DNA of 64,000 nucleotides from Octopus sinensis (lineage: Eukaryota), in NCBI RefSeq assembly GCF_006345805.1, contig NC_042999.1:88412001-88476000 (forward strand), in the 5' to 3' direction. The translations under genes and the position numbers were made by a program. This document shows positions 8,343-60,150 of this stretch, one piece after another (positions within the stretch are counted from its first letter, which is position 1; each line of letters opens with the position of its first letter). The notes below the pieces were generated by a model, which was not told the DNA's origin, searched no databases, and saw only the letters and a list, made by a program, of their open reading frames with translations.

Positions 8343-9061
8343 TATCACTCTAATAGACTATGAGATGTCCTTATCCATCATTGGTCAAAATGCTCTTCCA
8401 TTCTTCTGCTGACTGTGCCCTTTTCTTCCATTTGGGTCTGACGTTTTTGACTCTGTAGTGATCCTACAACGGCGCGCGCTCGCGCACCGTCCATTTGTAT
8501 TTCGCGCGTGTTGGGGCCTTTACCAAGGCAGAGAAAGGAAGGGCCCTCTCGCGCATGCGCGAACCACCGGAAGCACGACCCGCTTGCCTATCGTGGTAGT
8601 TAGCGAGGCAAGGGGGTCGTAGAACGTTTGACCACTAGCAGCAGTCATCGGGGACTTGGGACCCAGCGATTGAAGGCGGCGGTCACGCATATATTCTCTC
8701 CGGTTGATAGCAGCAGTCGGCCGAATGCCTTTAACCAAATTGTTGCCGACAACATTCAACTTCCCTGTTCGACGCCATCTTGACCCCTTTCTGGTTTAGC
8801 GGCTGGACATTGTAAATATTACAATCTATTAACTTTCAGCCTTGCGCGCCCAGAATCAAGGACATCAGATAACACACTTATTGTTATTGTTACCAAGAAA
8901 GAGAATAAAGTAGTTATATATATTTCACGTCTGCGTCTTGTTGTTTCTGACGGGCAGAGATTCTGGATTATTAAAGCAACGGCTAGTGAGAGTGATTGCC
9001 TTTCTTGTACCCCGAAAGTACAAGAAAGAGATATTCACATCACTCACTAAGTTCGTTTCAC

Positions 9062-10604: not shown

Positions 10605-12054
10605 CCTGTAGTGATCCTACAACGGCGCGCGCTCGCGCACCGTCCATTTGTATTTCGCGCGTGTTGGTGCCTTTACCAAGGCAGAGAAAGGAAGGGCCCT
10701 CTCGCGCATGCGCGAACCACCGGAAGCACGACCCGCTTGCCTATCGTGGTAGTTAGCGAGGCAAGGGGGTCGTAGAACGTTTGACCACTAGCAGCAGTCA
10801 TCGGGGACTTGGGACCCAGCGATTGAAGGCGGCGGTCACGCATATATTCTCTCCGGTTGATAGCAGCAGTCGGCCGAATGCCTTTAACCAAATTGTTGCC
10901 GACCACATTCAACTTCCCTGTTCGACGCCATCTTGACCCCTTTCTGGTTTAGCGGCTGGACATTGTAAATATTACAATCTATTAACTTTCAGCCTTGCGC
11001 GCCCAGAATCAAGGACATCAGATAACACACTTATTGTTATTGTTACCAAGAAAGAGAATAAAGTAGTTATATATATTTCACGTCTGCGTCTTGTTGTTTC
11101 TGACGGGCAGAGATTCTGGATTATTAAAGCAACGGCTAGTGAGAGTGATTGCCTTTCTTGTACCCCGAAAGTACAAGAAAGAGATATTCACATCACTCAC
11201 TAAGTTCGTTACAACTCCGTTACCTACCCGTCATCTTGAAGATATTTCTAGTGGTCTCTTCCGATCTCTTAAATACCATTTGACAACCGCATTATCTCAC
11301 GTGTTGTTTGTAACTCTTGTTGCATACATGTCTGGCTCAGCAGAAATTGTGCTTTCGGTATTCCGTGATCACATCGTTCGCTTTATTCTATTCTCGACTT
11401 ACTTTGTTTCTGATATACTCTCGAAACGATATTCTTATCATGGATCTTTCCTAGGCTCCATGTGTCGTAGCTAGTCGTTGATTTCTTTCTTCTTAATAGC
11501 TCGTATCTCACTTGAAATAAAAACGCAGGTAGGGCGTTGCTATTAAAGAGATTGGTGCACAGGGTCTTGTCCAACTTTGCTTTGAGCATAACTTTAATCG
11601 AGGCAAATGCCTTTGACCCTGCTCTTCCTCTGCGCCTGATTTCAGTGTTCATGTTTCGACATAAATTTCGTGTTTGTCCCAAGGAGACGTATTTCTTCAC
11701 CACTTTATTTTCATTGCTCCCCAACACTATTTGACTTTATGCTATGCTTCCAGGCGGTTTATTTTGAGGTTTACGCTTTCAGATGCTTTATTTTGAGGTT
11801 TACGGCTGAACTCTGTAGGCTGAACTCTAGTGGGCAGCTGATCTGAGATTTCTCTAATGAGCACGATATCGTCTGCAAATTGGTAGTGTGCTCGTAGTTC
11901 GCTGTTGATGCTGATGACATCTTTCCTATTAATTCCTTTGATGTTTACTTCGAGGCAAGCGGTGAATAGTTTGGGAGAGATGTTATCACTTTATTTAACG
12001 TTCTTCTCAATGAGAACCCTTATAGATGGTAGCAGCAGAGATATATCAGTGGGA

Positions 12055-12655: not shown

Positions 12656-14187
12656 CAACCTTGGCCAAAAGTATTAGGCCAACCCAATGTTTTGGGGTTC
12701 TGCTATCTCAATGTTAATGAAACTCATGCACATAGTAGATTGTGGTATATTTCACAATAGGCATTAATTTTAATATCTGGTTGACCCTCATTTAGCATAA
12801 ATTACTGTTTTTATACTGTACTGTACATATGCAACCAATTATGAGTAAGACCAACGTCCAACATTAACTTATGTTTCCTTGATTATTTCAGAATTTTATA
12901 CTAAAATACATTGTAGATACAGTTAATAAGCAGTAAAATGCCTAAAACAAGGGAGTTGGGTGAGTGTAAGCGAGGTCAAATCGTAGATCATCATGAAGAT
13001 GGAATGTCTCAAAGGCAAATTGCTCAGAAGATGAAATGTTCTCGATGTGCTGTGAAAACGACCCTCAAGCACTTCAGAGAGACAAAACGTGTGAAGACAA
13101 TACAAAGAACAGGCAGAAAAAAGGTTACATCACCTCGTGATGATAGATCCATCATCCGTCAGTCGCTCAGAAACAGAAGAAAAACATCGTCGGAGCTCTG
13201 TGCGGACTTCAACAAGGCAGATACTTCAAAAATATCACCCAGAACTGTTAGAAGAAGGCTTGTAGAGTACGGTCTGAAAGGTTGTAAAGCCAGGAAGAGG
13301 CCATGGGTTTCTGAAGCGAATATGGAAAAAATCTGTGGGCCAAAAACCACTCAAATTGGACCAGTGAGCAATGGTCAAAAGTGATATGGTCTGATGAAAG
13401 TAACTATGAGGTAAGATAGTACATGTATTCAATCAACATATAAACTTAATGTAACTGGGTTGTTGCCCAAAATATATAAAGAAGTATCCGACATAAAGCT
13501 AATATTATTTTTCATATTCTTACTTGGGTTTTCAGTACATCTGGTGCAACTATTATGCGTCGCAGATGTGGGAAGCATTTAAGGTTGAATGTCTGGTACC
13601 AACCGTAAAAGATGGGAGTGGTTCTAACATGGTGTGGGCCTGCATGTCTGCCACAGACCCGGAGAATTGTTTTTATGTCAGGGAAGGATAAATTCAGCTA
13701 CCTCTGCTTCTATATTATCAGATATTTTAGAGCCATCAATTGCTAAATTGCATCCAGGAGTGTCGTAAAACAATGTTATCTTTCAACAAGACAACGCTCC
13801 ATGTCATACAGCAAAGAATACTCATTAATGGTTCAAGACACAGAGTATTATTCTCATGGACTGTCCAGTTCAAAGTCCCGATCGAACACCTAGATTCTTG
13901 GTGGAGCTATCAGGAACAGGAACACAACAATTGAAAATAAAGAGCATTTGTACCAAACGTTAAGAGAAGAATGGAGTAAAATTGCACCTAGCACCTGGAA
14001 GAAACTAGTTGATTCAATGCCTAACCGTATAAAAGCGGTAATCGATGCTAAAAGCGGGTCAACCAGATATCAACCCTAATGTATATTGTGAAATATGCCA
14101 TAATCTACCATGTGCATGAGTTTCATTAACATTGAGATAGCAGAACTCCAAAACATTGGAGTGGCCTAATACTTTTGGCCAAGGCTG
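12656..14187 (+). mobile_element. Tc1-family DNA transposon (DD34E), 1532 bp, decayed
   Basis: ~105-bp TIRs (ca[a/g]ccttggccaaaagtattaggcc...atttcacaata), TA on both sides. Confidence 0.95.
12938..14079 (+). pseudogene. Tc1 transposase pseudogene with a probable intron at 13411-13527
   Basis: MPKTRELGECKRGQIV HTH; WSDESNYE; ECLVPTVKDGSGSNMVWACMS; FQQDNAPCH; SPD; frameshifts and stops. Confidence 0.9.
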
Positions 14188-16730: not shown

Positions 16731-17399
16731 TTTTGCAGGAATGAAATTTGGTAATTGAAATATTTAAAATTTACCGTGTAATTGTAATTTAAAGCTATAT
16801 TGAATTTTAATTTCAGCTTTTCATTCACAAATAACGCTTACAAATTAATTTTCATTTATTGTCTTTGTAAAATAGCAAGTGTAAATATTCATAAGAGCTA
16901 CAGGACAATATTTACTTAGTAAGACGTTTGTTTTGATATGTATATTGTATAATTATTAATATCATAACAGTAATGGTGGATTTAGAGAAACATTATAGCG
17001 TTGAACAAAATTGATTTGTGGTATTTCTTCCGGCTGTTTAGGTTCTAAGTTGAAATTCCGCCAATGTCTGCTTTGCCCTTCATTATTACAGGATCGATAA
17101 AAATTACTGTTGAAAGTAGGGCAACATAATCGAATACATAAACCTTCCTTAAATTTGAGTCCTTTTACATAATTATTATTACTTTAGTACATTTTCCCAC
17201 TTTAGGCATTTAAGAAATTATTTGGGAGGAGGGGTTCTGCTACTGATATGGTACTTTGGATTCCGTCTTTTATCCCTGCCCTTCAAAAGTAGTATCTGTG
17301 TAATAGCCAAGCACTATAAATGTGGTCAATTAAATTTGAGTATCTGGAGAAATATGGTATATTCTTGTTTTATTTTGTTTTATAATCATATTTAAAACC

Positions 17400-17675
17400 T
17401 GAAGTATATTTGCCACTTAAATGTGGCTAACCCTTAAGGGTGGATGCTACTGTTGCTTGTAGCCCCAGGAGGATACCTCCTCCAGCTGGCTATTGCCACA
17501 CTTTCTGTGCCCTATCAGTATTTGCAAAGGGAAGCCATCCTTCCTATCTTCAATCTGACATGATACACACGGAGTCGAATTTCTGGGTATTGACCCGGGG
17601 CTACAAGCAACAGTAGCATCCACCCTTAAGGGTTAGCCACATTTAAGTGGCAAATATACTTCACATTGTCGTGCA
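17400..17675. mobile_element. Fold-back copy of the hammerhead-bearing repeat
   Basis: 17400-17466 and 17597-17663 are perfect reverse complements; the body is homologous to 21016-21225. Confidence 0.85.
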
Positions 17676-18761
17676 TATTTAAAACCGTCCTCAATCATCA
17701 CTTGCAATTAGAAAAAAAAATGGAAGATTAAGATGTTTTATCTTCAGTTTTCCCTGATATAACTCAAGGATGAATCTTTGTTTCTCAAACATTTACACAA
17801 AAATATCTCAAGATGTTTAAAAACACGAGTGTGTTTTTTATTTAAATTGATATATTTACAAATAGTAGTTTGTCATACCACCAAATACAACCCGCATCTT
17901 AGTTTACCATCTGGCAATAAGTTTTCTCAAGATTAGTCTAGAACCGAAGAATACATTTTTTACGTATGTTATTTAAAAGCTTCATAAAATTAGATCAGGC
18001 TTTCGTCTAAAAGCGTGTGAGAAGATTTCCGAAGAAATTCTTCCCCCATAAAACTACCAAAAATTGATCGCTCCACTTAAAGATTTCAGCGATAAAATTT
18101 GCACTCCGTTTATCAAAATAGTTTTCTAGATAGTCAAAAATATATTATTGTTGCATGATTTCATGATACCAATAAAACCTTACTTATTTCTAATAAATAC
18201 ACGTTAATTTCGTTGCCAACTGATTGTCTCTGATAAAATTCCTCGCTATCCTCTCTAGTATTGACAACTCCGTCTATAAATTCCGTTCGTAAGAATTTAT
18301 TACCCTGGAAATTAATACTAAAACTTCAGAATACATCGTATAAGAGATTATTTTTAAAAGGAAATGGAAAAGAATTCTAAATCCATCAATAAGATTAATC
18401 AATGAATTTAAAGCGAATCATTTGTATGAAGAATCATGGCTAAGTTTGTCTTGGAATATTTTTCAAGTTTCAAATTCCTTCATTTTGAATAGCTGTTAAT
18501 TGTTTTCTATATCTGAGGTCGACTGTCATATTTCATGTAGGGCAGTAAAGCTGACATAGCAAATGAACTCTTGATCAACAGCCATTTAAATATTTGAAAT
18601 ACGGACAAATGAATTGCTGTGTAACTTTAATCAAAAGCACATATACTCGCGCGCTTAAACATATAGACGTGCATACATAAAACATACATAGAAGTATTTT
18701 ATGTATGTATATATATGTGTGTTTGTGTGTACGTATATATAGTTATAGATGCATATAAGTA

Positions 18762-20385: not shown

Positions 20386-21015
20386 GAGGTAGGTACGTAC
20401 ATATATGTTTATATATATGCATATGTTCTATTTTATTAACATATATATATACATATATATGAAGAGAGAGAGAGAGAGAGAGAGAGGGGATGCAGAGTGA
20501 GGGAAATATTATATGCGTATGAAGAGAGAGATTTATTTATATATCTATCTGCATATGTGTATGTACACGCATACAAATATATAGGTATGTATATGTGTGT
20601 GTGCGTGCGTGTGCAAATATTGCATGTATGTTTAATAAATATGTTTCGTTTCACTGTGAACGTACATCCGGTAAATAAATTCCAGCAGTTTCGGTAGCTG
20701 GCACAAAGGAATTATCTCTCTGGTTTCGTTTTTTTTATTATTTTATTAAGATCGTAAGATCACTTATTTGACCACTGAACTGCTAAAGTAACAAATAATA
20801 TATCTTTTAAGAATAAGTTAATTAAACTATTTCTGACCTAAAGTCATTTGTGTAATAGCGCAAACTTGCACCATTGTATACATGACTTTAAAACAAAATG
20901 GTGAATCAAGATAATAACGTATGGCGTTGCACAAAATGGCGTCCAGTCATTATAAGGGTGAGTACATATGTATATATATACAATAATAAATCTCTGAACG
21001 AGGTATAAACAGTAG

Positions 21016-21262
21016 CTGCACGACAATGTGAAGTATATTTGCCGCTCAAATGTGATTAACCACTAAGGGTGGATGCTACTGTACCTTGTAACCCCAGGAG
21101 AACATCTTCTCCAGCTGGCTATTGACACACTTTCTGTGTCTTATCAGTATTTGCAAAGGGATGCCATCCTTCTTATCGTCCACCTGACGTGATACGCACG
21201 GACCCAGGTTTCTGGGTATTTACCCGTCGTCAGCGCACGACAATCACCGGTCTTCGATGCGA
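21016..21262 (-). mobile_element. Non-coding hammerhead-bearing mobile unit (retrozyme- or pLTR-like)
   Basis: Homologous to 17400-17675; gcacgacaat repeated at 21018-21027 and 21235-21244 (period 217 nt); abuts (TA)n. Confidence 0.75.
21189..21247 (-). ncRNA. Type I hammerhead ribozyme
   Basis: 5'-GUGAU UGU CGUGCG CUGACGA CGGG UAAAUA CCCA GAAA CCUGG GUC CGUGCG U AUCAC-3': full core, GUC site, stems I-III, U1.7 and a loop-2 terminal A. Confidence 0.85.
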
Positions 21263-21270
21263 TATATGTG

Positions 21271-21333
<63 letters not shown>

Positions 21334-21486
21334 ACATATATATATACATATATATATATATGTGTATATATATATACACACACATATATATATACATACA
21401 TATATATACACACACACATATATATATACATATATGCATAAGATAATAAAATTAGAATTGCGTTATAAACATAACTTTATATAGTT

Positions 21487-21490
21487 ATTA

Positions 21491-21550
<60 letters not shown>
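21487..21550. repeat. (TAA)n microsatellite
   Basis: Directly visible; flanks the R4/Dong element. Confidence 0.95.
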
Positions 21551-22852
21551 TGATAGCATTTCCCACACGCGGGTCCTCGAAACACTAGCCATGAAGTAGG
21601 TAGCACCAATAATTATCAAATACACAAAACACTATGAATAGATTGCCGACAGTGCTACAGCTCCAAACAAAAAAAAGAAACTCATGAAAACCAAAGCCAT
21701 TCTCATTTGAAGAGAAATATTCCAGGGAGACACGCTCTCTCCACTCCTTTTTATGCTTGGCACTGAGACCTTTATCTGACATGCTAATTAAAACTGGATG
21801 TGGATACAAATGTTACGGCAAAACAATCAGCCCCCTCTTATATATGAATGACCTAAAACTATACGCTACAAATGATAAACAGCTGGAAACACTACTACAG
21901 ACAGTATATGGACTTACTAAAGAAATAAATATGAAATTGGGCTAAGAAAATGTACCAAAGCAACCTTCAAAAGAGAAAAACTAGTTAAGAGTAGCAACAT
22001 CACATTAGATAAAACCAATGACATAAGAGAATTAGACCAAAGACTGTCATAGAAATATTTAGGAATCAATGAACTAGATAAAATACAACACACACAAATG
22101 AAAGAGAAAATAAAGAAAGAATACTATAGACGAGTTAGATCAATACTGAAAACAGAGCTCGATGCTAAAAACAAGATAATAGGCATGAACACTCTAGCCG
22201 TCCCAGTTGCAGCTACAATATCCTTAACTGGACACTAAATGAACTAACTAAAATAGACAGGAAAACAAGAAAAATAACGACAGTATCTAGGATGTATCAC
22301 CCAAAATCTGACATAGAAAAGCTATATATACAACGTATAGAATGTTGTAGAGGCCTTATACAGCTGGAAAACTATTATAAAATAACCACCATAGGATTGC
22401 AAAAATACCTACTTCAGAAGCAAGGAAAACTAATACAAATAGCCACAAAACACGATCTAAACAAAAAACTGTTTTCAGTATTTAAGGAAGCTGACAAATA
22501 CAAACAAGAAGTCATACTACCTAACAAATATGAAGAAGAAGAAGAAGAAGAAGAAGAAGAAGAAGAAGAAGAAGAAGAAGAAGAAGAAGAAGAAGAAGAA
22601 GAAGAAGAAGAAGAAGAAGAAGAAGAAGAAGAAGAAGCAACAAAAGCTATAAAACAAATAAAAATCAAACTAAAACTAGAACGACAACGGTCCTTGATAA
22701 AACGATGGCAAGAAAAGTCCCTGCATGGCAAATACTGAGCTAAAATAAGCGCAAAAGAAATAGACAGAGAAAAATCTCAGCAATGGCTCAGTAGTGAAGT
22801 GAAAGCACCTTATAAAAATAACAAAATACTGAATAGTAATAATAATAATAAT
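21551..22852 (+). mobile_element. R4/Dong-clade non-LTR retrotransposon fragment, 5'-truncated
   Basis: IFQGDTLSPLLF, LLYMNDLKLYA, KYLGINE, MYHPKSDIEKLYIQRIECCRGLIQLE, WQEKSLHGKY; (TAA)n on both sides; (GAA)35 at 22532-22636. Confidence 0.8.
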
Positions 22853-25638: not shown

Positions 25639-26915
25639 CGAGGTGGTATCAAAATGTTTCCAGACTAGTTATATTTAATAAAAAGTAACTTATTCACCTA
25701 AGTTTTAACATCAACTTCGAAATTGTCACCTTGCGCAGCAATACACCGGTTCCAGTGTTCCCTCCACATTTAGAATCTGGCCTCAAATTCGTTTTCCGTA
25801 AGCGAATCGAGGAGTTTCTGCAATTCGCTCTGGATCGTGACAACGGTGTTAAAACGACGACCTTTGAGCTGTATTTTCATTGTGAAGAAGAGTTAAATCT
25901 CGCGAATAAGGTGGGTACGGAAGCGATAGTATGTTGTTTTTGGCGAGAAACTTACGAGTGAGGAAAGCTCGGTGGCAGGGTGCATTGTCGTCGTGAAGAA
26001 TCCAATTCTTCACGCTCCACAGATCCGGTAGCTTTCACCTAGTATCCTCCTCAAATGCTTCAAACATCGCTGTAGAACTCTCGATTGACGGTCTGGTTCT
26101 GGGGGACGAATTCTCGATGCACACTAACGCGGACGTCAAAAAAGACGATAAACATGCTTTTGATTGAGCTGCGGCTTTGTCGTGGCTTCTTCAGTCGTAG
26201 AGATGAAGGCTTCCTCCATTGCGGTGACTGCTGCTTCATCTCAGGGTCATGCACGTAAACATAGTTCTCTTCACCGGTGATGGTCTTCGACATGAAGGAT
26301 GGATCATCAGCGGCACGCTAATGAATATTTTGACAAACTTCGACCCGAAGTTTTTTCTGCTCAGTGGTCAGCATGCGAGGGACAGAAATACGCCGCGTGT
26401 TCAATTCAGACGTTAGGATTGCCTGTATGAACCCATACGACAGCAATGTCGTTGATTGTCCTCCGACGATCTTCATGCAAAAGCTGAATTTTCTCCCCAT
26501 TTCCGGGGGTGACGTTCGTGGCAGGTCTTCCAAATCGCTCATCGACTTCCAGGGACGTTCTTCCGTGTTTGAAGCGCCCATGCTAATCGAAACATTGCGT
26601 ATGACCCATTGCCATGTCGCCGTAAGCTTATGAAGCGAAGCATGCTCTTTGTCTATGTAGCAGACTTCCCAAGTTTAACGCAAAATTTCACTTCGGGCTC
26701 TTTGCTCAAACTTTCTGTCCATGACAAAATCGCAGACTGTAGCATACACGTGATAACAAAAACACAAATTTCACAACTTGCAAAGTAAGTACAGTGATGT
26801 CACTCGCACACTGCCTCATAAAGATCACTGCTGGCGCTCACTACACACGCAACTGTGTGCTGCTATCTCTTGACGTGCAACAGAACTAGTCCGGGAAGTA
26901 TTTGATACCACCTCG
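25639..26915 (-). mobile_element. mariner DNA transposon, 1277 bp, decayed
   Basis: TIRs TA|cgaggtggtatcaaa..gactagtt at both ends; transposase remnant 26722->25698: MDRKFEQR..VKFCVKLGKSA, ITGEENYVYVHDPEMKQQS, HDDNAPCH, HPPYS, QGDNFE. Confidence 0.93.
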
Positions 26916-40847: not shown

Positions 40848-40899
<52 letters not shown>

Positions 40900-40955
40900 G
40901 TGGGGGTAGTGGTAGTAATAGTAGTAGTAGTAGGTGGGGGTGGTAGTGGTAGTAA

Positions 40956-41710
40956 GGGCGGTGAGCTGGCAGAATCGTTAGCATACAGGGCGAAATGCTT
41001 AGCGGTATTTCGTCTGCTGTTACGTTCTGAGTTCAAATTCCACCGAGGTCTACTTTGCCTTTCATCCTTTCGAGGTCGATAAAGTAAGTACCAGTTACGC
41101 ACTGGGGTTGATATAATCGTCTTAATCCGTTTGTGTGTCCTAGTTTGTCCTCTCTGTGTTTAGTCCATTGTGGGTAGTAAAGAAATAGGTTTTTCGTCTG
41201 CCGCTACGTCCTGAGTTCAAATTCCGCCATGGTCGACTTTACCTTTCATCCTTTCTGGGTTGATTCAATAAGTACCATTTACGCACTGAGGGCGATATAA
41301 TCCGTTAGTCTGTCCTTGTTTGCTCCCTCTGTGTTTAGCCCCTTATGGGTAGTAAAGAAATAGGTATTTCGTCTGCCACTATGTTCTGAGTTCAAATTTC
41401 GTCGAAGTCGACTTTGCCTTTCATCCTTTTGGGGTCGATTAAATAAGTACCAGTTACGCACTGGGGTCGATAAAATCGACTTAATCCGTTAGTCTGTCCT
41501 TGTTTGTTCCCTCTGTGTTTAGCCCCTTGTGGGTAGTAAAGAAATAGGTATTTCGTCCGTCCTTACGTTCTGAGTTCAAATTCCGCCGAAGTCGACTTTG
41601 CCTTTCATCCTTTCGGAGTAGATAAATTAAGCACCAGTGAAGTACTGGGGTCGATTACATCGACTAACCCCTCCGCCAAATTTCAGGTCTTGTACCTGTA
41701 GTAGAAAGGG
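40956..41710 (+). mobile_element. Family-A SINE concatemer: one head plus four tandem bodies
   Basis: ~180-190-bp units ttcgtc..ctgagttcaaatt..cctttcatccttt..gtcga; three end in ..gggtagtaaagaaataggt, the last ends in the standard tail plus (GTA)n. Confidence 0.9.
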
Positions 41711-41736
41711 TTATTGTAGTAGTTGTAGTAGTAGTT

Positions 41737-41794
<58 letters not shown>

Positions 41795-43559: not shown

Positions 43560-45100
43560 TATATACAGAAGGAACTCTACAAATCCTACAAGCTGACACC
43601 AATATCCGCCCTTGACGACATCAACACCAACCATTACAAACTTCTGAATAAATTACACGTGGATGACCGCACAGAACCATACTGCCCTACACCTCCACGC
43701 TTCAACCTCAAAGATCATAAGAAGGGCTTTATAACCAAACCATCGATGCGCCTCATATGCCCCAGCAAATCCGACCTGGGAAGAATCAGCAAAATTATTT
43801 TGGACAAAATAATACCAATCGTCAAGGAGTGATTAAATTTATGGTCCAGTACAGGTGAAGTTATAACGTGGTTCCGTTTCTTAAACAACAAAACTCTTAT
43901 TCTTTCCTAAAATTCGATATAAATAATTACTACTCTTCTATTTCTACCAAATTTATTAATCAAGCTCTCCTTCTAGCTTGGAATCTAACTAACCTTACCC
44001 CACTAGAAATTAACATAATCCTTAGTGACCGTAAAACCCATATTTCTTTTGAGGACAAACTCTGGTACCGGGCCAATCACCATAACAATACCAATTTCCA
44101 TAACAATTTAGTTGACATTAACATGGGATCATCCTACACCGCCCAGGTCACCGACCCCGTTGGACTATACATACTCCACCAGCCCCAAATACATTTCCCT
44201 AGCCTTTAGGCTGGCCTCTACAGAGATGACGCCTTGCTAGTTACCAAGAGCGTAAATAATTCCTCTTTAGAACGAGCTAGAAAAGTTTTACACAGATTTT
44301 TCTTTAGCTTAAACCTGTCTATTACTTTTTGAAAATTACCACAAAACTACTAACTTTTTAGACGTAACTTTAAACTTAGAAACCTCCCAATACTCCCCTT
44401 ATCACAAACGTAACCAAGACATTAAATAGTTAAACATTCATTCTAATCACCAGAAATCCACCTTTGATAATATAGTCAAGGGTATTTCGATCCGTATATC
44501 TAACCTCTCTTCCACTGCGGAAATATTTAATAACTATGCACCATATTACAATCAACCGCTCGCTTCCAGCAGCTTCTCCCAACAAATAATCTCTAATCCT
44601 AGGTTCAAGCAACGTATATCTCAAATCACATCACAACGACACACCAACCACCAGAATCACAACAGACCACACATACACTATGCTATAACCCCAGGAGAAC
44701 CCGCATGAAGACAACCTAGACCCCACACGCACACCTATAACACTAGGTCAAAAGCTAAAACAACTAACAACAACGGCCATGCTACCCCACTCCATTTTCC
44801 AAAAATATAGATTGTTCTACCCCTAAGCACCCCCAAAAGTGGTTGACGCTTTATCTTGTGGTGTACACCCCCTTCTCACTAAACGTTAAAAACTTAGCTA
44901 AATCCTTCTTTAATATACTGGACTCCAACTTCCCTCGGCAACATAAATATTACTCTATCTTTAATGGATTTACCCTGAAGCTAACCTATTCTACCCCACC
45001 CAACTTCTGGTCTATCATAGCAGCCTCTTATTAACAAAAGCTTTCTCTCTACTATCAAAATTCACTCTATAACAACTCTGAATACACGAGCGCCCAACAA
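43560..45100 (+). mobile_element. Penelope-like element (PLE) reverse transcriptase, decayed
   Basis: FNLKDHKKGF..MRLICPSKSDLGRISKIILDKI, FLKFDINNYYSSIS, DINMGSSYTAQV, GLYRDD (YRDD 44219-44230), NFLDVTLNL, TPFSLNV..NFPRQHKY..LKLTYS; starts inside (CA)/(TA)n. Confidence 0.85.
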
Positions 45101-47885: not shown

Positions 47886-49565
47886 GTTAGACCAGTAGCC
47901 ACAACCGACACCCTACATGTCACACCAGTATTCTTGCTGAACATCAAGGGCCTTGTAACATCCCAACAACGCAAAATAGTATCTGAGCGACGTAGTGGCA
48001 TGTAATCAAGCAATATGTGCGTCACTAACAGAAACACATCTGAATATGGACACATCAAATGCTGAGATACACACACCAGGGTATGTTGTGTTTCGAACTG
48101 ACAGGAGAAAAAGGACTGATGGTGGGGTGACAATGTACATCCGGGAAGAGGTCACACCTGTAGTCCTGCTGTCACACTCAAATTCAATCTATGACACTGG
48201 TGGTACACATTAAACAGATGGAATTAATTATATGTACCATGTATCGCCCACCAGATGATCCAAATCATGGGGATTCATTTGAAGAGAATCTCCAAGAAAT
48301 GAGAGCCGGCACATACCTCTTTTAGGGGATTTCAACCTCCGTTACGTCAAATGGCCTGAAGGCCACATTCTCTCAGGTATGTCACTGCATGGCCTGAAGC
48401 ATACAGAATCTCTACTTGAGCTCACTAACATGCTCTTTATGGAGCAAATAGTGCTCCACCTAACAAGGGGTAAATGTCCTGGACCTCTATTTCACAAACA
48501 ACACGGTGCTCATCCATAATGTTGGTGTGACATCGATGATTTTCTCGGACCATAACTTAAAACTAACGATGTCTTGTCTGCATAAGACTACAGACATGCA
48601 GGCTACGGGAAGCACAGAACTCCTCAGCAGCCTGAATTTTCACAAAGCTGATTGGAAGGGTATCATGAAAGAGGTCATGGGACATAACTGGTGTGTCAGT
48701 TTCTCTACAGAAGAGGTTGACATAAAACTACAACACTTTATGACAATCATGCATGACGTCTGCAGTAAGTTTGCTCCAGAGAGAATACCAAGCCAGCAGA
48801 AAAATATAATACCCAGGGATAGGAGGATCCTAATGAGACGAGAGCAAAAATCTCAACTCGTCTAAAGGGGCCACCAAAGGCTAACAAGCAATTCTATTTC
48901 AAACGAACATTGCTCGAGATCGAAAATGAACTCAAACGCTTCCATGAAAAGGAGAGAGCAGAAAAGCAGGCCAGGGCTGTCAAAAATATTAAGACAAACT
49001 CTAAAGCCTTTTATAGATATGCAAAAGAAGCTGTTCAGTACGGTACAAAAGTGGGCCACTACTTGAAGAAAATGTCCCTCCGACTGCAGACCTCCAGAGG
49101 ATCAGTGAAATACCGAATGTGCAATACAAGAGCGTTTTCACAACTCCACAGGGACCCTTGTAAGTAGCTATGTCAGATGCGTGCTTTGGCTCTACAGATC
49201 TACAACTATATAGCAATTATTGACAATATCAACATAGAGGAAACTGATGTGATATTAGCCATTGATGAGATGAGCTCAAACTCAGCCACAGGACCTGACG
49301 GATTCCCAGCAATCCCCATAAAGAAATGCAAAGAGACTCTAGCTAGACCACTTCAGATTCTCTTTCAGAGCTTCCTCACAACAGGGAGACTTCCAAAAAG
49401 GTTAAAGGAAGGCATTATATGCCCTGTCCATAAGGGAGGTAGCAGATAGACGCTAAGAATTATAGACCTGTCTCTCTAACTTCCCATGTCAGCAAATTCA
49501 TGGAGATCACTGGCAGGAAGAAAATAATTGCGTTCCTTGAAGATAATGACTTGCTTCCTACCACA
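47886..49565 (+). mobile_element. CR1-group LINE ORF2 remnant: APE endonuclease plus RT N-terminus
   Basis: [49 protein letters not shown]; ATGPDGFPA..PVHKGGSR..KNYRPVSLTSHVSKFME; stops before the catalytic RT motifs. Confidence 0.85.
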
Positions 49566-57887: not shown

Positions 57888-59662
57888 TTAATGAGAAACA
57901 TGTGTCTGGTGCAATGCAGCTAGTGCAGATACATTCGGTTTCAAACTTGTCAATTTTAGCCGCAAGTTTCCTCGTTGTGTCACATTCAGTCCAATTCTTT
58001 TATGGGAAAGTTCCATCATGGTTAAAACCAGATTCAACCAGGTATGTGGTAGGGAAGGCAAACAAAAGTAATTTCAGATGTTTCCACAAACTGGGGTAGG
58101 AATTCAGTATACTTTGATGGTACCACAAACCTTCTTTGCCATTACAGTGATATCGCATTGTGGTGTCATTGTCATTTTGTAGTTCTATCAATTCCTGCAG
58201 AACGCCATCCTCACAATCGACTGCATCGACCGCAAACGAATTGTTATACCAATTTGGAATATTCAGCGCAATAACATCTTGAAATTGCTCCACCATGTTA
58301 CCGTGCAAGGATTGTAAATAGGTGCGTTATGTAGTTGAATCCTAATCAACTAATTTATCTTTCAAAGAATCAAGTTGTGGAAATTGATGAAACTGACGTT
58401 TTGAAATGTTAGTCTTGTACAGCACCAATTTCGAAATGAAGGTAGTGATAAATGATTTACAATCAACGAGAGATTTTTTGTTTCCTTGCAACAATGTATT
58501 CAAATCATTTAAGTTTGTGAATATATCACACACACACTCACACAAAGAAAAAAGATATCGCATCTTGCAGCCATCAATGAAGCGGATAGTGGAGTATCTT
58601 CAAAGAAAGATATGATTATACGAAACAGTTCAACAAAGCGTAAAACACAGTTTCCTTTTGAGAGCCATCGCACTTCGGTATGTTATAAGAGTTTAGTATG
58701 GTCCTCATCATTTCTCAGACAGAGTTGACGGAAAATTCGATCAGACAAGGGACTGGACTTCAATTTGTTCACAGTCTTGATAACTAACTGTAGCGCACCA
58801 TTCAACCTACTGTTCATAATTTTTGCCATTAAAGGCTGCCAGTGTGCCAAGCAATGAACAGTTAGTATCTCGTGAGAAATTTCACGCTTTAGGAGAGATG
58901 AAAAACATCTGTATCTTCCTATCATCGAAGGGGCTCCGCTCCATCAGACACACAGGCAAGAAATATTATTGAGTGGGATATTATGTTCAAAAAGGAAAGA
59001 CTTGAGAGTGTGAAAAATAGTTGCACCTCTTGAATCAAGCGGCAATGTCTTTGTGCACAGCATTTCCTCTCAAGGTTGAAGATCTTCGCTGAAATACCGA
59101 ACATATACCATCATCAAACATTGATTGTCCGCAACAGTTGACTCATCCACTTGTTTAGAAAATTCAGAACGCTGGAGAATATTAATGAGCTGATGTTTGA
59201 CATCGTTGGCCTTTTCATCGATGCTTCGAGAAATTGTGTTATCACTAAGGGGGATCTTTTTCGTGCACAACGGTTGACAAAACCTCTTCGATAACTGGGC
59301 AAAATAATGTTTCTTCAATTGTGTGAAACTTCCCAGACTTAGCAACAATCAATGCAATGTTGTACGATGCAATCAGCCATATTTCTCCTGTTTATTAGTT
59401 TCCTGGAGTAGCATGCTGAATGTTTGTATTTGCTTTTTGAAAGCGGAGCTCAGTTGCAAAAAGTATGATATCGGCTTGTCCTTCTTGTCAGAATACTTTG
59501 CATCAAAGTGATACCTCAAGTGTGAAGGTTTCATTGCTTCGTTGGTCAATGTTTGATGCAAAGAAGGCACTTCGGTAACTGACAGTTCTGAGGAGAGGGA
59601 ATAAATTCAAACGATAAAAAATCACTACTGTACTGTCGACAAATTTTGTTGACTGGAGGCAT
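57888..59662 (-). pseudogene. hAT/Buster transposase pseudogene
   Basis: CRQYSSDFL..PKCLLC, NEAMKPSHL, FSKQVDEST, CVSDGA, HCLAH, HTEVRWLSKG, FPTTYLVESGF; several frameshifts. Confidence 0.9.
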
Positions 59663-59784
59663 CAGTAAAGTGAAAATGTGAAAACGAATTTCTATAGATG
59701 GCATCAGAAAAGCAGTATGACAGTCCCAAAGAGAAGAAATCAATAGAGCAGAGTCAGATGACACGTCTTTACTGGAGTAAATAC

Positions 59785-60150
59785 GGATCTAGTTCGTTTG
59801 GCTGCCAGCATTTCAAAAGTTAAAGTTTATAGAAAATGTTAAAATTTGGCACATTAATATACCTTTCCAAGCTAAATTGCTGGAATTATTGAACTTTTTC
59901 CAGAAAAATGTTTTTAAAAAGTTATAGAGGTTTAAAGTTTGATCATTTTCACTCAGTCAAGAAACACGATTTCAAAGCTGTCATTTTGTGCGTGACTGCA
60001 CATTTTCTCCACATCCTGAAAATAGCACTTGTGTTTTAATATGAAATCACAGAATTACGCAAGACATATAACCCTTATACCTTTTTCTTTGCACGCATGA
60101 CAACCATCTCAATGACTGCGACAAAAATATTCGATCGATAAACAAGTCCG
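59785..60150 (+). mobile_element. Partial copy of the 31897-32691 MITE nested in the hAT 5' region
   Basis: ggatct..gtttggctgccagc; tttttccagaaaaat..gaggtttaaagtttgatcattttca..aaagctgtcattttgtgcgtg shared with 31897-32150. Confidence 0.75.

What the first reader, a model, noticed from the sequence alone, without database searches (positions are those of the whole stretch)
21189..21247. Type I hammerhead ribozyme with a full catalytic core and Schistosoma-like tertiary-contact geometry (minus strand)
Seen: the minus strand reads GUGAU-UGU-CGUGCG CUGACGA CGGG UAAAUA CCCA GAAA CCUGG GUC CGUGCG-U-AUCAC. Core residues C3-U4-G5-A6-N7-G8-A9, G12-A13-A14-A15.1 and U16.1-C17 (GUC triplet; predicted cut between plus coordinates 21201 and 21200) are all present. 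Stem I is 6 bp (2 G-U), then an internal loop, then a perfect 5-bp GUGAU/AUCAC helix. Established: in the S. mansoni hammerhead, U1.7 pairs with the 3' A of a hexaloop (CAAAUA); here position 1.7 is U and loop 2 is UAAAUA. A very short stem III is typical of PLE and satellite hammerheads, which can act as dimers. Caveat: pair 10.1-11.1 is a C-A mismatch, which may reduce activity in this copy. The ORF track gives no hint of this element.
Basis: partly seen in the sequence, partly recalled or inferred. Interest (0 to 1): 0.9.

Follow-up and report, generated by a model that had tools for sequence, protein, structure and literature searches.

The report
Hammerhead-like motif at octopus repeat junction
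A sequence with every conserved base of a type I hammerhead ribozyme sits where the tail and head of a short octopus retroposed repeat meet; it is most likely a crippled relic of a known kind of ribozyme-carrying mobile element, not a proven working ribozyme.

Summary
All core bases, a GUC site and three possible helices are present. A motif this good occurs in about 0.2% of shuffled windows, and in none of 2884 when the outer 5-bp helix is also required.

Evidence that it is a working or conserved ribozyme is weak:
- Rfam does not report it, but Rfam also misses a conserved Penelope-element hammerhead that I used as a control.
- The hammerhead fold is strongly disfavoured: -10 against -20 to -35 kcal/mol, with helix II pair probability 0.0005.
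- Helix II has only 3 bp above a C-A mismatch.
- The only paralogue, at 17400-17673, lacks the 5' third of the motif.

The window is octopus DNA. The motif straddles the boundary of a ~200-nt retroposed repeat. The repeat's first ~45 nt supply helix II, loop 2, GAAA, helix III, GUC and the 3' strand of helix I. A 16-nt direct copy of the repeat's own 3' end supplies the rest.

This head-to-tail layout is that of animal retrozymes. My best reading (0.45) is a decayed retrozyme-like junction. A chance composite remains a serious rival (0.35). More genomic copies would decide it, and none could be reached here.

The parts
21189..21247 (-). Hammerhead-like motif (type I topology), as reported
   Evidence: Read. 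It is the only descriptor hit in the window.
21227..21233 (-). CUGACGA box (C3-A9). It lies outside the block shared with the paralogue. CUGAC belongs to the 16-nt left direct repeat.
21213..21226 (-). Helix II and loop 2: C10.1, GGG, UAAAUA, CCC, A11.1. C10.1-A11.1 is a mismatch, leaving 3 bp.
   Evidence: Conserved in copy B as GGG-UCAAUA-CCC-A.
21201..21212 (-). G12-A13-A14-A15.1, helix III (C-G plus CUGG loop), U16.1, C17. The predicted cut is 3' of 21201.
   Evidence: In copy B, GAAA and UC are kept but the 6 nt between them differ at 5 of 6 positions (UUCGAC).
21202..21217 (-). Competing perfect hairpin ACCCAG-AAAC-CUGGGU. It sequesters the 3' strand of helix II, G12 and helix III.
21173..21189 (-). 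CGUCAGGUGGACGAUAA, complementary to the motif's 5' third (UUGUCGUGCGCUGACG). A second competitor that takes the CUGACG box.
   Evidence: MFE structures. Coordinates.
21229..21244 (-). Left direct repeat ATTGTCGTGCGCTGAC. It supplies most of the 5' strand of helix I and CUGAC. Its first 10 nt equal the repeat family's 3' end.
   Evidence: The 3' end is also seen in copy B's inverted arm.
21028..21228 (-). Copy A of the repeat unit (201 nt, 47% GC).
   Evidence: 85% identical to copy B over 198-206 nt.
21012..21027 (-). Right direct repeat ATTGTCGTGCAGCTAC (14 matches and 2 indels against the left one).
   Evidence: (local alignment p=0.0065).
21262..21435 (.). (TA)n/(CA)n microsatellite, 18 nt upstream of the motif.
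17400..17596 (-). Copy B, direct unit (197 nt). It starts at GGGTCAATACCC, which corresponds to helix II of the motif, and has no CUGANGA upstream.
17597..17673 (-). Copy B, inverted 5'-truncated arm: 10 nt CACGACAATG, then 67 nt that are 67/67 complementary to the 3' end of the direct unit.
17674..17686 (-). Copy B target-site duplication GGTTTTAAATATG (left copy). The right copy is at 17387-17399.
   Evidence: The two copies match 13/13.

Best explanation
Organism and element. The window is octopus DNA. The motif is the one head-to-tail junction left at this locus of a short (~200-217 nt) non-coding retroposed repeat.

How the motif is assembled.
- The first ~45 nt of the unit carry helix II, the UAAAUA loop, GAAA, helix III, GUC and the 3' strand of helix I.
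- The last ~16 nt of the unit (ATTGTCGTGC-GCTGAC) carry the 5' strand of helix I and most of the CUGANGA box.
- A hammerhead therefore exists only when a unit's 3' end is followed by a unit's 5' end, that is, in a tandem or circular template.
- This is the layout of animal (non-LTR) retrozymes and of hammerheads in Penelope-like element terminal repeats.

Inferred mechanism for the family. Multimeric transcripts cut themselves after GUC. The unit-length RNA is ligated into a circle. A retroelement reverse transcriptase copies it for roughly one turn and integrates it.
- Copy A is slightly more than one turn, hence the 16-nt terminal redundancy.
- Copy B is slightly less than one turn, plus an inverted truncated copy.

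State of this copy. I take it to be a decayed relic with little or no monomer activity, for three reasons:
- C10.1-A11.1 mismatch.
- A 3-bp helix II.
- Two much stronger competing hairpins.

Shown: the sequence, the repeat structure, the direct repeats and the fold energies. Inferred: the tandem or circular template, self-cleavage, and the identity of the mobilising enzyme.
For: (1) The full core and three helices are unlikely by chance: 6/2884 shuffles, and 0/2884 with the distal helix.

(2) Peripheral features match the Schistosoma-type type I design: a 6-bp proximal helix I, an internal loop with U1.7, and hexaloop UAAAUA against CAAAUA (PMC2632901).

(4) The 5' third is a direct copy of the repeat's own 3' end.
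- That 3' end (CATTGTCGTG) is family sequence, not local target DNA.
- It also ends copy B's inverted arm.
- B is a young insertion (arms 67/67, duplication 13/13), yet differs from A by 15%.

(5) The element behaves like a retroposon of the Penelope or retrozyme style:
- a 13-bp duplication;
- an inverted 5'-truncated copy abutting a direct copy;
- insertion beside (TA)n (PMC8557442; PMC7229834).

(6) Unit size (~200-217 nt) and 47% GC fit the 170-400 nt, <50% GC range.

(7) GAAA and UC are identical in A and B, while the helix III segment between them changed at 5 of 6 positions. That segment stays largely self-complementary: CCUGGG against UUCGAC, with one double and one single compensating change.

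(8) The Rfam negative carries little weight. A hammerhead conserved in both terminal repeats of ten Penelope-like contigs is also missed.

(9) A mismatch at the base of helix II occurs in that control (U-U) and in axolotl retrozymes.
Against: - Only two copies could be examined, and B cannot show the 5' third because an inverted arm abuts helix II.
- No tandem array and no second junction exists in the window.
- No copy of the repeat and no hammerhead motif was found in 148 kb of other cephalopod DNA.
- The 16-nt flanking repeat is in the size range of an ordinary target-site duplication, and its inner edges coincide with the A/B homology block.
- Both units start 24-27 nt upstream of the putative cut site, so their templates were not cut there. 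In the control Penelope-like element, the 5' end maps about 8 nt downstream of its cut site.
- The hammerhead fold is thermodynamically negligible in A.
- Helix I is still unfavourable in a chimera of A's 5' third with B's 3' part.
- The sequence beyond the right repeat does not continue as a second unit (p=0.84).
Confidence: 0.45

Rival explanations
1. Chance composite at an insertion boundary. A ~200-nt SINE-like retroposon with a fixed 5' end at (GA)CGGG inserted into a site that reads ATTGTCGTGCGCTGAC. The 16-nt flanking repeat is its target-site duplication. The duplicated target happens to supply CUGAC and a strand that pairs with the quasi-palindromic CGUGCG inside the element. No ribozyme was ever involved, and the RNA folds as a long hairpin.
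For: - The inner edges of the 16-nt repeat coincide with the ends of A/B homology, and both copies start within 3 nt of each other.
- The repeat length (16) is like B's duplication (13).
- The paralogue lacks the 5' third.
- There is no Rfam hit.
- The hammerhead fold is negligible against the competitors.
- CGUGCG pairs with itself, so helix I costs little.
- The base descriptor rate of 0.002 per window implies tens of chance motifs per octopus-sized genome.
Against: - CATTGTCGTG would have to be both A's target and the 3' end of B's source, although B is young and 15% diverged from A.
- Several independent coincidences would be needed: CUGA at the exact register, the 5-bp distal helix (0/2884 shuffles), an AAAUA-ending hexaloop, U1.7, and a 2-bp helix III with a tetraloop.
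Confidence: 0.35
2. A currently functional type I hammerhead at this locus. It would self-cleave after C21201 as a monomer helped by loop 2-internal loop 1 contacts, or as a dimer through an extended helix III.
For: - Full core and a Schistosoma-like periphery.
- ACCUGGGU is self-complementary if G-U pairs are allowed, as a dimeric helix III requires.
- Mismatches at the base of helix II are tolerated in some natural hammerheads.
Against: - C-A at 10.1-11.1.
- A 3-bp helix II with pair probability 0.0005, and helix III with probability 0.0.
- The competitors are 10-23 kcal/mol better.
- Cofolding two copies gives no extended helix III.
- There is only one copy at the locus, so no dimer can form in cis.
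- No conservation.
Confidence: 0.08
3. A foldback or MITE-type DNA transposon whose long hairpin RNA or DNA is the only real structure. Copy B, with 67-bp inverted arms, would be the typical form. Copy A would be a left-truncated derivative, and the hammerhead resemblance would be irrelevant.
For: - B has perfect 67-bp inverted arms and is nearly palindromic overall.
- The 209-nt stretch 21244-21036 around A's motif folds better than shuffles (z=-2.4).
Against: - B's arms are unequal: the left has 10 extra terminal nt inside the duplication.
- A 13-bp duplication is atypical for cut-and-paste families (my own knowledge).
- A has no left arm but does have a direct, not inverted, copy of the terminal 10 nt.
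- No transposase partner shares the ends. The window's Tc1, mariner and hAT remnants are unrelated.
Confidence: 0.07

Closest known systems
Schistosoma mansoni Sm-alpha type I hammerhead (canonical metazoan type I)
   Same: - Open helix I with a 6-bp proximal part, an internal loop and a distal helix.
- A U at the 5' end of the 3'-strand side of the loop (U1.7).
- Hexaloop 2 ending AAAUA (UAAAUA here, CAAAUA there).
- Full core and a GUC site.
- Residence in a short non-coding retroposon-like repeat.
   Different: - The helix II base pair is a C-A mismatch, leaving 3 bp.
- The internal loop is 3x1, not 4x4.
- The hammerhead fold is not the favoured fold.
- Rfam does not recognise it.
- No activity data exist.
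Animal non-LTR retrozymes (tandem 170-400 nt repeats with type I hammerheads; PMC7229834)
   Same: - Unit size of about 200-217 nt and GC 47%.
- Duplications longer than 4 bp.
- A hammerhead that needs a head-to-tail junction.
- Helix III of 2 bp with a tetraloop.
- A helix II base mismatch is known in axolotl HHR_Amex2.
   Different: - No tandem array here: one unit plus 16 nt.
- No second copy with the 5' third.
- Unit ends are not at arbitrary positions and not at the cut site.
- Circular RNA was not tested.
- No cephalopod retrozyme appears in the held literature.
Hammerheads in terminal repeats of Penelope-like elements (control family L005-L014, 'Hydra-clade'-like)
   Same: - Insertion architecture: an inverted truncated copy, partial tandem, and (TA)n neighbourhood.
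- A mismatch at 10.1-11.1 (U-U in the control).
- Rfam is blind to both.
- A decayed element of this clade lies in the same window at 43.6-45.1 kb.
   Different: - No reverse transcriptase ORF next to the motif.
- No sequence similarity to the control hammerhead or to the window's PLE remnant.
- The control folds into the hammerhead shape as its MFE, and its element 5' end lies just after its cut site. Neither holds here.
SINE-type retroposon with a target-site duplication
   Same: - A discrete unit of about 200 nt with the same 5' start in both copies.
- 13-16 nt flanking direct repeats.
- No coding capacity.
   Different: - No tRNA-like part (ARAGORN found none).
- No poly(A) or simple-repeat tail.
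- The flanking repeat of copy A begins with 10 nt of the element's own 3' end.

Membership tests
Hammerhead ribozyme, type I | Conserved core C3-U4-G5-A6-N7-G8-A9, G12-A13-A14, A15.1-U16.1, H17 (not G) | tested here: met
   CUGACGA 21233-21227, GAAA 21212-21209, U 21202, C 21201.
Hammerhead ribozyme, type I | Three helices around the core, with helix I open and helices II and III closed | tested here: met
   Helix I is 6+5 bp, helix II 3 bp, helix III 2 bp with a tetraloop. It is the only such site in the window.
Hammerhead ribozyme, type I | Base pair at 10.1-11.1 closing helix II on the core | tested here: not met
   C21226 opposite A21213. A11.1 is shared with copy B. Natural exceptions exist: U-U in the control PLE and in axolotl Amex2.
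Hammerhead ribozyme, type I | The hammerhead secondary structure is an accessible fold of the RNA | tested here: not met
   -10.0 against -19.8 kcal/mol (59 nt) and -35.1 (93 nt). P(helix II pairs) = 0.0005. The control PLE hammerhead folds correctly as its MFE. Tertiary contacts are not modelled.
Hammerhead ribozyme, type I | Match to the curated covariance models (Rfam Hammerhead_1 and clan) | tested here: not met
   no hit at gathering score or at E<=10. Sensitivity control: a conserved PLE hammerhead is also missed, so this test is weak.
Hammerhead ribozyme, type I | Core and helices conserved, with compensatory changes, across homologous copies | tested here: inconclusive
   one paralogue only. 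Helix II, loop 2, GAAA and UC are kept. Changes in the 3' strand of helix I are C-to-U at CpG and keep pairing. Helix III is broken at 15.2-16.2. The 5' third is absent because an inverted arm abuts it.
Hammerhead ribozyme, type I | Site-specific self-cleavage giving 2',3'-cyclic phosphate and 5'-OH | not testable with these tools
   Needs in vitro transcription or RNA end mapping.
Animal non-LTR retrozyme | Head-to-tail tandem units of 150-450 bp, each junction carrying a type I hammerhead | tested here: inconclusive
   one 201-nt unit preceded by a 16-nt copy of the unit's 3' end (period 217). There is no second unit, and the sequence after the right repeat is unrelated (p=0.84).
Animal non-LTR retrozyme | Low GC (<50%) and duplications longer than 4 bp when present | tested here: met
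   GC 46.7-46.8%; 13-bp duplication around copy B.
Animal non-LTR retrozyme | Expression as linear and circular unit-length RNA | not testable with these tools
   No transcriptome access.
Penelope-like element terminal-repeat hammerhead | Motif lies in a terminal repeat flanking a reverse transcriptase/GIY-YIG ORF | tested here: not met
   the neighbouring ORF remnants are a decayed LINE on the other strand. The PLE remnant is 22 kb away and shares no sequence.
MITE / foldback DNA transposon | Terminal inverted repeats at both ends and a duplication of fixed length | tested here: inconclusive
   copy B has 67-bp inverted arms, but they are unequal by 10 nt. Copy A has none. The flanking repeats are 13 and 16 nt.
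tRNA-derived SINE | tRNA-like 5' part with A and B boxes | tested here: not met
   ARAGORN finds nothing in the window. Only a weak B-box-like TTCGACTCC appears in copy B.

The most novel reading that the evidence does not exclude
Octopus genomes carry a live, so far undescribed retrozyme-like family of about 217 nt. Its Schistosoma-style type I hammerhead is split across the unit ends and works only in tandem or circular RNA, probably as a dimer through a self-complementary helix III. Copy B, with perfect arms and a perfect duplication, would be a recent product of that cycle. This would be the first cephalopod example.
Probability: 0.2. Interest if true: 0.5.

Novelty: new member of a known kind. 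Interest (0 to 1): 0.3.

Why it matters
If the family consensus proves to be a hammerhead junction, it would extend ribozyme-bearing circular-RNA retroelements (retrozymes) to cephalopods. It would also give a small, recently active element (copy B) in which to study how such RNAs are copied back into DNA.

If it proves to be a chance composite, it is a useful caution. A perfect hammerhead core with three helices, and even Schistosoma-like loops, can arise at a repeat boundary. Neither an Rfam hit nor an Rfam miss settles such cases, because Rfam also missed a conserved Penelope-element hammerhead here.

Either way, this individual copy is unlikely to matter to the host.

Tried and rejected
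RNA family searches.
- Rfam at gathering score and at E<=10 on 601-nt and 91-nt sub-windows gave no hammerhead, only microsatellite-driven miRNA noise.

Searching for more copies of the repeat. All attempts failed.
- nhmmer and BLAST within the window found only copies A and B.
- Exact scans of the metagenome collection found nothing: a 19-mer of the arms, then a helix II/loop 2 pattern.
- An exact scan of viral contigs found nothing.
- A protein search with the repeat's open frame found no candidate.
- A profile search of 1.84 billion representatives with the frame covering the motif gave two spurious hits to repeat proteins.
- Exact look-up of ten window ORFs found none in the collection.

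Fetching other cephalopod DNA.
- I used LINE and PLE protein homologues: O. bimaculoides L001 and L003, O. sinensis L002 and L015, Argonauta L004, 148 kb in all.
- They held no copy of the repeat and no hammerhead descriptor hit.

Ideas considered and rejected.
- A tRNA origin for the repeat: ARAGORN found nothing.
- The 38 nt after A's right repeat being a degenerate second hammerhead: not significant (p=0.84).
- An extended dimer helix III: cofolding does not form it.
- B's lineage folding better: a chimera of A's 5' third with B's 3' part forms helix II (P=0.84) but not helix I.

Literature.
- Searches for hammerheads or retrozymes in cephalopods found nothing specific.
- The Martick and Scott paper was not held.

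Full report
1. The observation

- CUGACGA is at 21233-21227, GAAA at 21212-21209, U16.1 at 21202 and C17 at 21201. The predicted cut between 21201 and 21200 is correctly placed.
- Helix I can form 6 bp (two G-U), then a 3x1 internal loop, then GUGAU/AUCAC.
- Helix II is only GGG/CCC above a C10.1-A11.1 mismatch.
- Helix III is A-U plus C-G with a CUGG loop.

Is it more than chance?
- The bare core pattern is expected about once per window.
- A structural descriptor finds only this site in the real window. The descriptor requires the core, helix I 6/6, helix II >=3/4 and helix III >=2 bp.
- It finds 6 hits in 2884 dinucleotide shuffles, and none when a 5-bp distal Watson-Crick helix is also required.
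- The motif is therefore unusual for one window. The base motif alone would still recur by chance tens of times in a 2-3 Gb genome.

2. Direct tests of the ribozyme reading

Rfam.
- It reports no hammerhead at the gathering score, nor at E<=10 in 601-nt or 91-nt searches.
- I checked how much that means. A relative of a Penelope-like element (PLE) found in this window was fetched on ten contigs (L005-L014).
- It carries a hammerhead conserved in both terminal repeats: CACGGCAC-CUGAAGA-U-CGCC-UCCAA-GGCG-U-GAAA-CUACUAG-UC-GUGC.
- Rfam misses this too. The Rfam negative is weak evidence.

Thermodynamics are a stronger negative.
- The hammerhead secondary structure scores -10.0 kcal/mol. The MFE is -19.8 for the 59-nt motif and -35.1 with 30 nt of flanks.
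- In the ensemble, helix II pairs have probability 0.0005, helix III 0.0 and proximal helix I 0.04.
- There are two competitors. A perfect ACCCAG-AAAC-CUGGGU hairpin (21217-21202) takes the 3' strand of helix II, G12 and helix III. UUGUCGUGCGCUGACG pairs with CGUCAGGUGGACGAUAA (21189-21173) and buries the CUGACG box.
- The control PLE hammerhead adopts the hammerhead shape as its MFE.
- Cofolding two copies does not give an extended helix III.
- These energies ignore tertiary contacts and co-transcriptional order. However, the first competitor forms from the same nucleotides and in the same order.

3. What the motif sits in

The window is eukaryotic: 35% GC, rich in microsatellites and full of decayed transposons. 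A LINE remnant at 47980-49446 has its best protein matches (79-82% identity) in Octopus bimaculoides and O. sinensis, so the window is octopus DNA.

Copy B.
- Self-comparison shows that 21029-21226 has an 85% identical paralogue at 17400-17597.
- Copy B is a complete, young insertion.
- It has a 13/13 target duplication GGTTTTAAATATG (17686-17674 and 17399-17387).
- It has an inverted 5'-truncated arm (17673-17597) whose 67 nt are 67/67 complementary to the 3' end of the direct unit.
- It has a direct unit of 197 nt (17596-17400).
- The inverted arm carries 10 extra terminal nt, CACGACAATG, the complement of CATTGTCGTG.

Copy A.
- It is a 201-nt unit (21228-21028).
- It is flanked by a 16-nt direct repeat: ATTGTCGTGCGCTGAC at 21244-21229 and ATTGTCGTGCAGCTAC at 21027-21012.

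How the motif maps onto copy A.
- A/B homology starts at C10.1/G10.2.
- Helix II, loop 2, GAAA, helix III, GUC and the 3' strand of helix I are therefore the first ~45 nt of the repeat.
- The 5' strand of helix I and CUGAC lie in the left 16-nt repeat.
- In B, the corresponding upstream sequence is the inverted arm (GCUUGUAGCCCC), so B neither shows nor refutes the 5' third.

4. Two readings of the 16-nt repeat

Reading one: target-site duplication.
- This would make the motif a chance composite.
- In its favour, its inner edges coincide with the homology block, both units start within 3 nt of each other, and its length resembles B's duplication.

Reading two: terminal redundancy.
- The cDNA was copied for slightly more than one turn from a tandem or circular template.
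- In that case the hammerhead is a designed feature of the unit junction, as in retrozymes.

The key discriminator available here:
- CATTGTCGTG follows ...ACTTCA both at A's right end and in B's inverted arm.
- B is young (perfect arms and duplication) yet 15% diverged from A, so B was not copied from the A locus.
- The 10 nt are therefore family sequence rather than A's private target.
- That makes the left repeat in A a second copy of the family's 3' end, placed directly before the unit's 5' start. This is the head-to-tail arrangement.

Points against the second reading:
- The sequence after A's right repeat does not continue as another unit (p=0.84).
- Both units retain the 24-27 nt upstream of the supposed cut site, so their templates were not cleaved there.
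- In the control PLE, one insertion (L005) begins about 8 nt after its hammerhead's cut site, as expected if cleavage defines the 5' end.

5. Peripheral features and context

Peripheral features.
- PMC2632901 confirms the Schistosoma contact. The Schistosoma hammerhead has a CAAAUA loop 2 whose 3' A pairs with the 5' U of internal loop 1, and a pyrimidine at the 3' end of that loop inserts into loop 2.
- The candidate has UAAAUA, U1.7, and a U closing the 5'-strand side of the loop.
[quoted passage not shown] It reports a U-U mismatch at the base of helix II in axolotl HHR_Amex2, retrozyme RNAs of ~170-400 nt (tandem repeats of 150-450 bp), GC <50%, and duplications longer than 4 bp.
- The unit here is 201-217 nt at 47% GC.

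Context.
- PMC8557442 describes PLE insertions as partial tandems, often with an inverted 5'-truncated copy, short tails, and a bias for microsatellites such as (TA)n.
- Copy B has the inverted truncated copy. Copy A lies 18 nt from a 174-bp (TA)n/(CA)n array.
- About a dozen such arrays occur in 64 kb, so this adjacency has roughly a 1-3% chance.
- A decayed PLE of the short single-ORF type lies at 43.6-45.1 kb. It has 964 homologues, one with a GIY-YIG domain. It shares no sequence with the repeat.

A versus B within the motif.
- GAAA and UC are unchanged between A and B.
- The 6 nt between them differ at 5 positions, yet both versions remain largely self-complementary: CCUGGG and UUCGAC. 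This is a weak hint of a dimeric helix III.
- The two changes in the 3' strand of helix I are CpG-to-TpG transitions and carry no information.

6. Verdict

The formal hammerhead is there and is hard to attribute to chance once the distal helix and loop 2 are counted. This copy fails the fold test and has a mismatched helix II, and conservation cannot be shown.

My probabilities:
- 0.45: a decayed junction of a retrozyme-like, hammerhead-bearing short retroelement of octopus.
- 0.35: a chance composite at a retroposon boundary.
- 0.08: a ribozyme that is active as it stands.
- 0.07: a foldback or MITE reading.

The decisive step could not be run with the collections at hand. It is a census of the family in the source genome, together with an orthologous empty site. 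Every route to further copies failed.

If real, this is a new member of a known kind, and I found no cephalopod precedent in the held literature. I rate its interest as modest.

Noticed in passing
window 17387-17686: Copy B of the repeat looks like a very recent insertion. It has a 13/13 target duplication and 67/67 inverted arms, with one arm 10 nt longer than the other. This head-to-head double copy is the form described for Penelope-like element insertions.
   Followed up: partly
window 43600-45100 (+): A decayed reverse transcriptase of the short single-ORF Penelope-like type (YRDD and FLDVTL blocks). It has 964 homologues of ~700 aa on 2.4-3.5 kb contigs, one with a GIY-YIG domain. The only cephalopod hits are a 58% identical O. 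bimaculoides fragment and an Argonauta protein.
   Followed up: partly
L005-L014 (e.g. L006 376-440 and 2878-2942): The intact relative of that element carries a conserved hammerhead in both terminal repeats, with a U-U mismatch at 10.1-11.1. Rfam does not report it even at E<=10 in a 91-nt search. In L005 the element's 5' end starts about 8 nt after the cut site.
   Followed up: partly
window 41004-41665: A tandem repeat of a 184-bp unit (3.6 copies, 82% matches). It has a tRNA T-arm-like GAGTTCAAATTCC segment and is bracketed by (GTA)n arrays at 40848-40933 and 41716-41794. ARAGORN and Rfam report nothing there.
   Followed up: no
window 8523-9047 and 10676-11200: Identical ORF-sized stretches recur at an offset of 2153 bp, which indicates a recent local tandem duplication of about 2.15 kb.
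   Followed up: no
window 21560-22740 (+): A 5'-truncated, frameshifted LINE reverse transcriptase remnant next to the motif on the opposite strand. It is interrupted by a perfect (GAA)35 array at 22532-22637 and preceded by (AAT)20 at 21491-21550.
   Followed up: partly
window 12917-13381 (+), 26063-26674 (-), 47980-49446 (+), 58003-59788 (-): Remnants of a Tc1 transposase N-terminus (Pfam HTH_Tnp_Tc3_2), a mariner-like transposase, a LINE endonuclease/RT (best hits in Octopus) and a hAT-like transposase. No intact host gene was seen in the 64 kb.
   Followed up: partly
window 21312-21417: The (TA)n/(CA)n microsatellite draws many sub-threshold Rfam miRNA matches (mir-297, mir-466 and others, 27-57 bits against gathering scores of 75-110). 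These are low-complexity artefacts.
   Followed up: yes
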